A DNA stretch of 63,524 nucleotides, the filler included, from Olpidium bornovanus S191 (lineage: Eukaryota > Fungi > Olpidiomycota), in the NCBI GenBank assembly GCA_017911155.1. It is 30 parts of 30 records of this genome, joined end to end, with 100 filler letters (N's around TTAATTAATTAA, not from the genome) between each part and the next. Parts side by side here need not be neighbours in the genome. Positions count along the whole stretch, not along the records: positions 48,577 to 50,089 come from JAEFCI010001260.1; 29 more parts are not named here. One strand, written 5' to 3'. The notes under the pieces are model-generated. The model worked only from the letters and a program-made list of their open reading frames with translations. It had not been told where the DNA came from and searched no databases. The position numbers and the translations under genes were made by a program. The number at the start of each line of letters is the position of its first letter. The first letter of the stretch is position 1. This document shows positions 48,577 through 50,089 of this stretch, in pieces.

Positions 48577-48648
48577 CTCGCGCGACTTGTTTCGCCCCAA
48601 CTCGCGCGACTTGTTTCGCCCCAACTCGCGCGACTTGTTTTGCCCCGA
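48577..48648 (+). repeat. 24-bp tandem repeat array 1 (inside presumed intron)
   Basis: (CTCGCGCGACTTGTTTCGCCCCAA)x3, third copy variant, running off the contig start. Confidence 0.95.
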
Positions 48649-48683
48649 TTCCCGATGTTGACATCGCGTTTCCTTCCGCGAAG

Positions 48684-50089
48684 AGATAGTAACGAGGGCT
48701 CTTCAACAAGCGATCGATCGCGCGGATCCGTTGGCGATCGCGATGGAAGCACGAGAGCGTGCTGTCGTAACCGGCGACGTTTCTCGCCACCAGTGCACGG
48801 GGGTCGATATCGCGGTGTACTCTAGCAACCGCATGATGCGCGTCTGCGGTGCTTCAAAGGCCGTGTGGGCTCCGGGCCAAGGACCATTCATGCCCGCTCC
48901 CCCTCGCTTCCTTCGTCCATCCTTGATAACGGGTTGGTGGTCGAGCAAGGGACTGGTGGCGCATCGCTTCCTTGTGCCAGCCGAACTTGACGCGGGCGTC
49001 CCGAGTCTGGCAGCCAGGCAGGCGTGGTTCCGCGCCTCCGTTATGTGCGGACGAGCCCTGCAACCCTGCACGATCCCGCCTCTCCCCACGGACTCGCCCC
49101 TCCTAAAGTCAACGCTCCGCCTCTTGGACGAGGATCTCCAGAGCGACGGGCACCAGTCCCGGCAAGACGTGACGGCCGTCAGCCCATGGTGGCGCGACGA
49201 TCTTCGTTGCATCCAATACGCGCGAGCTTCGAAGTCGCCGTCTCCGGCGACTCTGCCGACGGGCCATCAGCGGCCCTTTTCAAAACGTCCGCGCCCCTCG
49301 CCGTTCGAGAAGAGCGGCTCCACCCGCTCGTGCTTCGTTTTTGACGAAGACGTTGAAGGATTGATCCCGCGATGCTACAGGGACGACGGATCAGGGTGGA
49401 TCGAGGTCTTTCCGGGAGGGCACCGGCGCGTCGCGGGAGCAGAAGCTGACCGGGTGGAAATCGAGTATTGCACACGTGCCGTCAGCGCGGACCCGCCGCA
49501 CATCCAGTATGTGCGAGCAATGATGGTCTTGCGCGAGCTTGATTTCCGGTACCGATTGCTGGTACGTCCTTGACTTCGGTTCCGCGAGGTGTTTCGCCCC
49601 AACTCGCCCACTCGCCCGAGGGCGAGGACGCGCGACTTGTTTCGCCCCAACTCGCGCGACTTGTTTCGCCCCACCTCGCGCGACTAACTCGCGCGACTTG
49701 TTTCGCCCCAACTCGCGGATTCATAGGCGCCCGACATCGACCCTGAGTCGCGCGCTGGACTCGAACAGTCCCACGCTACTCTCTTGCGCGAGCTGCGCTC
49801 ACTGCGGGACCGAGGATGGACCTCTGTCGCCGGAATGTCCGACGAAGCATGTCGGGCGATGTTCTCGGACTCGGTTGTCACGTACGTTATCCCCGAGTTT
49901 CCCGTTTACGACGCCCTCGCCGGGAGATACGTCCGGCTAGCGGACGTGAATCAAAAGACAATTGTATACTGCCCCCGCCACGAAACGACCGGGGAGCACA
50001 GCCCGTCGGCATTCGTCGCGCAACTGGAGTCCGGGCGACGATTCATATACTGCTCGGTCTGCTCGCCGGCGGCTGGGCGAGGGCGCATA
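48684..50089 (+). CDS. Archaeo-eukaryotic primase (PrimPol/viral-type) fragment with C-terminal CHC2-like zinc finger, partial at both ends
   Basis: VDIAVYSSNRMMRVCGASK (48803-48859) fits AEP motif III (human PrimPol VDLGVYTRNRNFRLYKSSK). A phase-0 intron at 49562-49726 joins it to CPRHETTGEHSPSAFVAQLESGRRFIYCSVC (49970-50062; CPxH..PSxxV..YCxxC). Confidence 0.65.
49589..49716 (+). repeat. 24-bp tandem repeat array 2 (inside intron 49562-49726)
   Basis: Same unit as array 1: three full copies, one partial copy and one 13-bp deletion variant (GCGCGACTAACTC). Confidence 0.95.

What the first reader, a model, noticed from the sequence alone, without database searches (positions are those of the whole stretch)
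48684..50089. Virus/plasmid-type primase (AEP motif III + CHC2 zinc finger) with spliceosomal introns
The AEP motif III-like segment is followed by a Pro/Ser-rich linker with an NLS-like KRPRP and a CPxH...PSAFV...YCxxC finger. That finger is DnaG/phage CHC2-like, not the UL52-type finger of cellular PrimPol. Established: AEP primases with accessory Zn fingers and helicases are typical of large DNA viruses, Polinton-like viruses and plasmids. Inference: this is an endogenised or self-replicating DNA element, or a domesticated viral primase, now processed by the host spliceosome. Catalytic motifs I/II and any helicase would lie off-contig.
Basis: partly seen in the sequence, partly recalled or inferred. 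Interest (0 to 1): 0.8.

Follow-up and report, generated by a model that had tools for sequence, protein, structure and literature searches.

The report
Virus-type primase gene fragment with introns
This 1.5-kb piece holds the middle of a gene for a rare virus-type DNA primase-helicase, and both stretches that interrupt or precede its coding sequence look like spliceosomal introns built from the same 24-base repeat; it is a new member of a known kind of gene, not a new kind.

Summary
One + strand frame is open for 303 codons, then again for 121 codons to the piece's edge. It contains the motif-III-like segment, a Pro/Ser-rich linker with KRPRP, and a C-x2-H...C-x2-C finger.

Both stretches match a very rare protein family: about 9 proteins among roughly 15 billion. 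A profile of six relatives scores E 2e-20 for the first stretch and 7e-23 for the second. The hits are colinear.

The full-length relatives (1420-1450 aa) carry:
- an N-terminal part with primase-like (AEP) motifs;
- the same zinc finger;
- a helicase that passes Pfam's cut-off for the herpesvirus origin-binding protein family.

They lie, without introns, on AT-rich contigs beside a Pol-delta-like polymerase and an RPA-like gene. This fused primase-helicase architecture is already described for mimivirus R8 and similar proteins.

Between the two open stretches lie 165 nt with GT-AG ends. Taking them out fits the relatives' spacing (170 vs 176 residues). This stretch shares 57 nt at 98% with the intron-like stretch at the piece's 5' end, so both look introner-like.

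Not shown:
- No AEP profile or fold hit.
- The DnaG-type reading of the finger is below threshold (E 0.13).
- Splicing is not demonstrated.
- Whether the piece is endogenous or from a free virus cannot be told.

Interest is moderate to low.

The parts
48684..50089 (+). Middle part of a primase-helicase-like gene. Both ends are cut: upstream exons and everything after the zinc finger lie off the piece.
   Evidence: Frame open 48662-49570 and 49727-50089. Family profile hits at E 2e-20 and 7e-23, colinear. BLASTP to P0003 at 3e-13 and 1e-11. No stop or frameshift inside either open stretch.
48577..48683 (+). 3' part of a candidate upstream intron, cut by the piece's edge. It has a pyrimidine run and four AGs at 48683-48696, so the acceptor is not fixed.
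   Evidence: Sequence. AG list and a TTGAC branch-like motif. An in-frame stop precedes 48662. Homology to relatives starts only downstream. Shares 57 nt at 98% with the complete intron candidate.
48577..48646 (.). Tandem array, 24-nt unit CTCGCGCGACTTGTTTCGCCCCAA, 2.9 copies
   Evidence: Tandem Repeats Finder, score 133, 97% matches; repeat family D1.
48764..49075 (+). Conserved block shared with the family. It holds the motif-III-like hairpin (48800-48859: D49, Y53, R60, G63, K66 invariant in 7 sequences) and PRFLRPSLITGWW (48902-48940).
   Evidence: Profile positions 241-335, E 2e-20. Invariant columns. Alignment block. Coordinates.
49076..49561 (+). Lineage-specific middle region, including the Pro/Ser-rich linker 49226-49321 with KRPRP at 49283-49297
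   Evidence: No similarity to the AT-rich relatives. Its first third is similar to the GC-rich relative P0001: window residues 83-181, E 5e-15. Codon-position GC stays coding-like.
49562..49726 (+). Candidate spliceosomal intron, 165 nt: GTACGT donor, ACTAAC 39 nt before the acceptor, CATAG acceptor. It holds 3 in-frame stops.
   Evidence: Signals. Best donor and first AG after the branch motif among 49 frame-keeping GT..AG pairs. Spacing between the two profile hits is 170 residues without it and 225 with it, against 176 profile positions.
49629..49685 (.). Second array of the same 24-nt unit, 2.4 copies, with further partial units up to about 49716
   Evidence: Tandem Repeats Finder, score 107, 96% matches; family D1; blastn against the first array, 57 nt at 98%, E 7e-27.
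49820..50068 (+). Conserved block with the zinc finger. The ligand candidates C82, H85, C109 and C112 of the second open stretch (49970-50062) are invariant in 7 sequences, together with P83, S94-A95-F96 and G103.
   Evidence: Profile positions 512-595, E 7e-23. Invariant columns. AlphaFold2 pLDDT 72-89 over residues 51-115, strand-rich.

Best explanation
The piece is the middle of an intact-looking gene for a virus-type replication protein.

Shown: the piece carries the last catalytic motif of a primase-like domain, and about 300 residues further on a four-ligand zinc finger. Both are homologous and colinear with a rare family of 1420-1450-residue proteins. In those proteins the same two blocks are preceded by D-x-E and s-x-H motifs and followed by a UL9-like SF2 helicase.

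Inferred from the families involved: the primase domain would make primers, the separate finger would hold the single-stranded template as in UL52 and PrimPol, and the helicase would open and unwind DNA.

Inferred from signals and spacing: the coding sequence here is interrupted by GT-AG introns built from one 24-nt repeat-bearing element (introner-like). The gene must then be transcribed where a spliceosome works, in a nucleus.

Most likely the gene sits in the nuclear genome of a GC-rich eukaryote as an endogenous virus-derived element. A nucleus-replicating virus is the main alternative.
For: Homology:
- HMMER over 1.84 billion representatives found only 3 relatives of the first stretch. 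A profile of six relatives gives E 2e-20 and 7e-23, colinear.
- The motif-III residues and all four finger ligands are invariant across 7 sequences, the window included.

Architecture of the relatives:
- D-x-E, s-x-H and D...R.hR.xG..K patterns are visible in P0003-P0007 and in the upstream ORF of L003.
- PF02399 scores above its cut-off and PDB UL9 is hit; phrog_4913 'replication' scores 1e-8 to 1e-15.
- The AEP plus UL9-like SF2 fusion is described for mimivirus R8 and related proteins (preprint 10.1101/2024.02.29.582850).

Virus-like context of the relatives:
- Their genes are uninterrupted, beside a delta-like PolB and an RPA-like gene on three contigs, among ORFs with no Pfam hit.

Intron:
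- GTACGT / ACTAAC / CATAG signals, length divisible by 3, best of 49 possible pairs, and a fit to the spacing.
- The two intron candidates share 57 nt at 98% (E 7e-27). That meets the introner-candidate criterion used in PMC12768974.
- The piece starts inside the repeat, as contigs do at dispersed repeats (inference).

Precedent: introners in endogenous viral elements (PMC12166617) and intron-rich nuclear viruses (PMC12768974).
Against: - No Pfam, NCBIfam, PHROG or PDB profile recognises an AEP domain in the window or in any relative.
- The AlphaFold2 model of the first stretch is unusable (pLDDT 41). The finger model finds no structural neighbour (best E 1.4 in PDB and 0.45 in BFVD).
- Motifs I and II and the helicase are off the piece, so this copy may lack them.
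- Residues 139-300 of the first stretch show no similarity to the AT-rich relatives.
- There is no RNA evidence of splicing.
- The repeat was found nowhere else, so 'dispersed element' is unproven.
- Nothing on the piece says whether the flanks are host or viral.
Confidence: 0.55

Rival explanations
1. The gene is as described but lies on the genome of a free, nucleus-replicating large DNA virus or episome that carries spliceosomal introns, not in a host chromosome.
For: Mirusviruses carry tens of thousands of GT-AG introns, include high-GC genomes, and have candidate introners defined exactly as here (PMC12768974). The two exons are free of stops and keep every invariant residue. That fits a working gene.
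Against: No relative of this family was found in IMG/VR. Every full-length relative is uninterrupted. No capsid or other virion gene is on the piece or in the 17.6 kb read of L001. The intron-rich mirusvirus orders are reported to lack replication genes.
Confidence: 0.2
2. It is a decaying endogenous viral fragment. On this reading the 165-nt stretch is a minisatellite or small-transposon insertion that breaks the gene and is not spliced out, and the GT and AG ends are fortuitous.
For: The stretch is mostly tandem repeat and holds 3 in-frame stops. 49 frame-keeping GT..AG pairs exist, so some pair is expected by chance. The middle of the first stretch has lost similarity to the family. The only GC-rich relative (L002) gives a single significant segment. 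Introns and transposons in endogenous giant-virus genes are taken as signs of decay (discussion of PMC12768974).
Against: The donor is the best on offer (5 of 6 to GTAAGT). The acceptor is the first AG after an ACTAAC. Removal restores both the frame and the family's spacing. There are no stops or frameshifts in 421 codons of exon. All invariant residues are kept.
Confidence: 0.17
3. It is the host's own vertically inherited PrimPol-type gene (primase domain plus UL52-like finger, no helicase).
For: The layout, a primase domain followed by a separate downstream finger, is that of PrimPol and UL52 (PMC4538821). The gene has introns and GC-rich codon use.
Against: No hit to any PrimPol or UL52 family or structure. 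The only relatives in two searches of billions of proteins are helicase fusions. If the gene were widespread and cellular, many hits would be expected.
Confidence: 0.04
4. It is no gene at all, only chance open frames in GC-rich DNA.
For: The ORF length alone is only marginally unusual (p about 0.05).
Against: Profile E-values of 2e-20 and 7e-23 in the same frame and in the right order.
Confidence: 0.01

Closest known systems
AEP plus UL9-like SF2 helicase fusion proteins of large DNA viruses (mimivirus R8, ASFV pF1055L, the Ostreid herpesvirus 1 homologue, the 'SF2_hel' proteins of some Yaraviridae), as described in preprint 10.1101/2024.02.29.582850
   Same: In the window's relatives: an N-terminal domain with primase catalytic motifs followed by a helicase of the herpesvirus origin-binding-protein family. 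The window aligns to the primase motif III and the pre-helicase finger of those relatives.
   Different: No named member of that group came back from any search, so direct homology to R8 or F1055L is not shown here. The relatives are longer (1420-1450 aa) with about 400 further C-terminal residues. The window copy is GC-rich, interrupted by intron candidates, and its helicase, if any, is off the piece.
Herpesvirus UL52 primase and eukaryotic PrimPol (NCLDV-herpesvirus clade of AEPs)
   Same: Primase domain followed by a separate, strand-rich four-ligand (Cys/His) zinc finger far downstream (PMC4538821; model secondary structure).
   Different: No sequence or fold match to either. The ligand knuckles are C-x2-H and C-x2-C. 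The relatives carry a fused helicase, which those two lack.
DnaG-type CHC2 zinc ribbon (Pfam PF01807) and phage 'DNA primase' fingers (phrog_360, phrog_18097, phrog_6088)
   Same: Same ligand pattern. PF01807 is the only Pfam family listed for the window's finger (E 0.13), and phage primase profiles recur among family members (E 7e-4 to 0.2).
   Different: The Pfam score is below its cut-off (12.6 bits against 24.9) and the PHROG hits are mostly weak, found in only 1 or 2 of 5 members each. No TOPRIM domain follows. The profile search of the PDB found no DnaG or T7 primase finger.
Introners, meaning intron-generating repeated elements, including those found inside endogenous viral elements (PMC12166617) and in mirusvirus genes (PMC12768974)
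   Same: Two intron candidates of one gene share near-identical sequence that does not extend into the exons. Both have canonical GT-AG or AG signals.
   Different: Only two copies are seen, both on this piece. No terminal inverted repeats or target-site duplication were established. The shared part is a 24-nt tandem array. No match in any public collection searched.

Membership tests
Archaeo-eukaryotic primase (AEP) superfamily | Catalytic motif III (acidic residue on a strand, followed by the conserved basic and small residues) | tested here: inconclusive
   The pattern is present and invariant with the relatives (D49, Y53, R60, G63, K66). The AF2 model draws a hairpin there, but at pLDDT below 50. 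This is pattern-level evidence only.
Archaeo-eukaryotic primase (AEP) superfamily | Catalytic motifs I (D-x-D/E) and II (s-x-H) upstream of motif III | not testable with these tools
   Off the piece. In the relatives, D-x-E and S-F-H patterns stand at the expected places.
Archaeo-eukaryotic primase (AEP) superfamily | Significant match to an AEP sequence profile or an AEP fold | tested here: not met
   No AEP family in Pfam, NCBIfam or PHROGs for the window or for P0002-P0007, nor for three N-terminal fragments. No AEP chain in the PDB by sequence or profile. The N-terminal halves of the relatives could not be folded within the tools' limits.
AEP plus UL9-like SF2 helicase fusion (R8 / F1055L type) | C-terminal helicase of the Herpes_ori_bp family (PF02399) | not testable with these tools
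   The piece ends 9 codons after the finger. In the relatives the feature is met: 32.4, 27.2 and 24.1 bits against a cut-off of 20, and PDB UL9 at E 0.008.
AEP plus UL9-like SF2 helicase fusion (R8 / F1055L type) | Homology of the window's product to proteins with that architecture | tested here: met
   Database-wide E-values of 1.5e-4 and 3.5e-4 to P0002 and P0003. Pairwise 3e-13 and 1e-11. Family profile 2e-20 and 7e-23, colinear.
DnaG-type CHC2 zinc ribbon (PF01807) | C-x2-H ... C-x2-C ligand pattern | tested here: met
   Present at 49970-50062. The ligands are invariant in 7 sequences.
DnaG-type CHC2 zinc ribbon (PF01807) | Score at or above Pfam's gathering cut-off (24.9 bits) | tested here: not met
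   12.6 bits, E 0.13 for the window's finger. 2 of 5 family fingers match, the best at E 0.059.
PrimPol / UL52-type primase | Match to PrimPol or UL52 profiles or structures, and no fused helicase | tested here: not met
   No such hit. All full-length relatives carry a helicase.
Spliceosomal (U2-type) intron | GT donor, branch-site motif, AG acceptor, and removal keeps the frame and the protein colinear with relatives | tested here: met
   GTACGT, ACTAAC at -39, CATAG, 165 nt. Spacing of 170 against 176.
Spliceosomal (U2-type) intron | Spliced transcripts | not testable with these tools
   No expression data for the source.
Introner | At least two introns of one genome with high sequence similarity that is confined to the introns | tested here: met
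   57 nt at 98%, E 7e-27. Repeat family D1 lies only in the two intron candidates.
Introner | Many dispersed copies in the genome; transposon hallmarks | not testable with these tools
   The source genome is not available. The repeat is absent from JGI metagenomes, IMG/VR, GTDB genomes and the paper library.

The most novel reading that the evidence does not exclude
The window and its relatives may represent an undescribed lineage of nucleus-dependent DNA elements or viruses of eukaryotes. They would carry their own replication module: a primase/zinc-finger/UL9-like helicase protein, an RPA-like protein, and a polymerase nearly as close to cellular Pol delta as Pol delta orthologues are to each other. 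On this reading the GC-rich copy in the window was caught while being colonised by an intron-generating repeat, a direct example of introner traffic between such elements and host genomes.
Probability: 0.15. Interest if true: 0.6.

Novelty: new member of a known kind. Interest (0 to 1): 0.35.

Why it matters
If the reading is right, the piece adds a divergent, GC-rich, intron-bearing member to a very small family of primase-helicase genes, otherwise known only from about nine metagenomic or draft-genome proteins. It also gives one more case of the same repeat forming two introns in a virus-derived gene. That bears on the current question of whether large DNA viruses and their endogenous copies carry intron-generating elements between eukaryotes.

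The piece is too short to settle either point. The protein architecture and the intron phenomenon are both already described.

Tried and rejected
Searches of the window's own products that found nothing significant:
- Pfam, NCBIfam, PHROGs and PDB sequence searches of both open stretches.
- The word-indexed protein search with the first stretch.
- Exact look-up of four ORF variants.

Searches for related DNA that found nothing:
- IMG/VR, with both stretches and with the family alignment.
- JGI metagenomes, by a family peptide pattern.
- GTDB genomes.
- The 24-nt repeat in JGI metagenomes, IMG/VR, GTDB genomes, the fetched loci and the paper library.
- Rfam: no RNA family on the piece.

Structure:
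- The first stretch folded with 8 sequences gave pLDDT 41, so I did not search with it.
- The second stretch gave pLDDT 69, but Foldseek against the PDB and BFVD gave nothing below E 0.4.

Other dead ends:
- A finger-only profile against the PDB found no primase.
- I tried to reach a recognisable AEP through phage proteins that share the helicase. The N-terminal 450 residues of the Pseudoalteromonas phage KB12-38 protein also have no Pfam hit.
- The middle of the first stretch against the family profile: nothing, even at E 100.
- Accession numbers of the source samples are not in the paper library.

Rejected readings: PrimPol orthologue, chance ORF, bacterial gene.

Full report
**What is on the piece.** The piece 48577-50089 is 1513 nt and about 62% G+C. 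One + strand frame is open from 48662 to 49570 (303 codons), and again from 49727 to the edge at 50089 (121 codons). Codon-position G+C in that frame looks coding throughout: position 2 is lowest and position 3 highest.
- a motif-III-like segment at 48800-48859;
- a 32-residue linker that is 44% Pro+Ser (49226-49321), with KRPRP at 49283-49297;
- a C-x2-H-x23-C-x2-C finger at 49970-50062.

ORF length alone is weak evidence at this G+C: 4.7% of shuffles reach 303 codons.

**Is it a gene, and of what family.** Direct family and structure searches of the two products gave nothing significant. The word-indexed protein search also gave nothing.

A full HMMER pass of the first stretch over 1.84 billion cluster representatives found three proteins:
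- P0001: 128 aa, GC-rich contig, E 4e-7.
- P0002: 616 aa, E 1.5e-4.
- P0003: 1419 aa, E 3.5e-4.

The second stretch, which was not used in that search, matches P0003 and P0002 just where their zinc finger lies (BLASTP 1e-11 and 4e-11). Searches from P0003 added P0004 to P0009.

A profile I built from six relatives hits the first stretch at residues 35-138 (profile 241-335, E 2e-20). It hits the second at residues 32-114 (profile 512-595, E 7e-23). The two hits are in the same frame and in the right order. Residues D49, Y53, R60, G63 and K66 of the first stretch are invariant across seven sequences. So are C82, P83, H85, S94, A95, F96, G103, C109 and C112 of the second. The gene is real.

**What the relatives are.**
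- The full-length members (1419-1453 aa) begin with a domain that shows a D-x-E pattern, an S-F-H pattern and the motif-III pattern in the order expected of an archaeo-eukaryotic primase.
- The finger follows, and then a helicase.
- The helicase passes Pfam's cut-off for the herpesvirus origin-binding-protein family in three members (32.4, 27.2 and 24.1 bits against 20).
- It also matches solved HSV-1 UL9 chains (E 0.008) and phrog_4913 'replication' (1e-8 to 1e-15).
- JGI names P0005 'Origin of replication binding protein'.

No tool recognised the N-terminal domain as a primase. That identification rests on the motif patterns and on the literature. The Mriyavirus preprint (10.1101/2024.02.29.582850) describes exactly this fusion, an intact AEP domain ahead of a UL9-related SF2 helicase. 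It reports the fusion in mimivirus R8, ASFV pF1055L, an Ostreid herpesvirus 1 protein and some Yaraviridae. None of those named proteins came back from my searches, so I file the window beside that group, not inside it.

**Context of the relatives.**
- On L001 (the first 17.6 kb of a 32-kb ENA contig) and on L004 (JGI), the gene is uninterrupted and lies head-to-head with an RPA-like OB-fold gene.
- A family-B polymerase lies nearby on L001, on L004 and on the contig of P0009.
- The other neighbouring ORFs have no Pfam hit.
- The L001 polymerase is remarkably close to cellular Pol delta (E 1e-250 to yeast, 1e-241 to human, against 1e-70 to HSV UL30). The RPA-like protein is too divergent to hit any solved structure.
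- One member is an NCBI hypothetical protein of the fungus Jimgerdemannia flammicorona, alone on a 5.8-kb contig.
- The family is absent from IMG/VR.

This is a conserved replication module on gene-dense DNA that is otherwise full of ORFs with no Pfam hit. That is virus-like or element-like, but no virion gene was seen.

**Breaks in the relatives** (counts only). L003 carries the gene in two reading-frame pieces, one break, which may be a sequencing error. L001, L004, L005 and L006 carry it in one frame. L002 gives a single significant segment.

**The intron candidates.** Between the two open stretches lie 165 nt with 3 in-frame stops.
- They begin with GTACGT and end with CATAG.
- An ACTAAC lies 39 nt before the end.
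- Of the 49 GT..AG pairs that would keep the frame and take out all stops, this one has the best donor and uses the first AG after the branch-like motif.
- Without the stretch the two profile hits are 170 residues apart, and with it 225. The profile has 176 positions between them.

Most of the stretch is a tandem array of a 24-nt unit. The same array, 2.9 copies, opens the piece and is followed by a pyrimidine run and four AGs just before homology begins. The two stretches share 57 nt at 98% (E 7e-27), and the similarity does not enter the exons. That is the operational definition of a candidate introner used for mirusvirus genomes (PMC12768974).

Published precedents exist for both settings. 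Introners populate a quarter of the endogenous viral elements in dinoflagellate genomes (PMC12166617). Mirusviruses carry tens of thousands of spliceosomal introns.

No dedicated predictor was available, and the stretch could equally be an insertion. All searches and folds used the two stretches apart.

**The zinc finger.**
- Its ligand pattern is of the DnaG CHC2 type.
- PF01807 is the only Pfam family listed for the window's finger, but far below its cut-off (E 0.13). 2 of 5 family fingers match it, the best at 0.059.
- Phage 'DNA primase' PHROGs recur (7e-4, 0.09, 0.2).
- A finger-only profile finds no primase among solved structures.
- The AlphaFold2 model (pLDDT 72-89 over the finger, strand-rich) has no structural neighbour.
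- The overall layout, a primase domain and then a separate strand-rich finger that primase activity needs, is the one described for UL52 and PrimPol (PMC4538821).

**What remains open.**
- The middle of the first stretch (residues 139-300) has no similarity to the AT-rich relatives. Its first third is shared with the GC-rich P0001 (E 5e-15). It may be a fast-evolving linker or the start of decay.
- Nothing tells whether the flanks are host or viral, whether the gene is expressed, or whether this copy has the catalytic motifs I and II and a helicase.
- The repeat occurs in none of the collections I could scan.

**Verdict.** This is a genuine fragment of a rare virus-type primase-helicase-like gene with introner-like intron candidates. 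It is most likely an endogenous element in a GC-rich eukaryote (0.55). The main alternatives are a free nuclear virus (0.2) or a dead copy with an unspliced insertion (0.17). It is a new member of a known kind, and interest is moderate to low.

- The output shows per-frame hit coordinates for the relative L002. I do not repeat either here.

Noticed in passing
L001 1-12531; L004 1-7836; contig of P0009 (no DNA held): The relatives share a replication module: the primase-like/finger/UL9-like helicase gene, an RPA-like OB-fold gene, and a family-B polymerase as close to yeast and human Pol delta (E 1e-250 and 1e-241) as cellular orthologues are to each other. The module sits among ORFs with no Pfam hit. 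Gene order differs between contigs. No capsid gene was seen and the family is absent from IMG/VR. The kind of element is unknown.
   Followed up: partly
L005 746-5246 (GCA_003990745.1, RBNI01014350.1): A full-length family member is annotated as hypothetical protein BC936DRAFT_139146 of the fungus Jimgerdemannia flammicorona. It sits alone on a 5.8-kb contig of 36% G+C. The reading frame is continuous, although the deposited gene model is longer than the protein needs. Whether it is integrated, episomal or a contaminant cannot be told.
   Followed up: partly
L003 1-2528: In this Logan contig the family gene is in two reading-frame pieces (one break). The first piece carries the D-x-E and S-F-H motifs. 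This could be a sequencing error or a real defect.
   Followed up: no
L002 1-921: This is the only GC-rich relative (55.7% G+C, Logan ERR11554255). Just one segment is significantly similar to the window (E 5e-15), and the PRFLRP...WW motif is degenerate there. It is possibly a decayed copy.
   Followed up: partly
window 49676-49692: The ACTAAC branch-site-like motif of the complete intron candidate arises where one 24-nt repeat unit is truncated. The repeat array itself supplies the splicing signal.
   Followed up: no
L007 2645-6136 (MF098558.1, ASV44003.1): A Pseudoalteromonas phage protein of 1163 aa has the same UL9-like helicase (PF02399, 37 bits). The helicase is preceded by about 450 residues with no Pfam hit, so it may be a bacterial-virus counterpart of the same two-part layout.
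   Followed up: partly
window 48703-49212 (- strand): An antisense ORF of 169 codons overlaps the coding region. This is expected by chance at 62% G+C, and I did not search with it.
   Followed up: no
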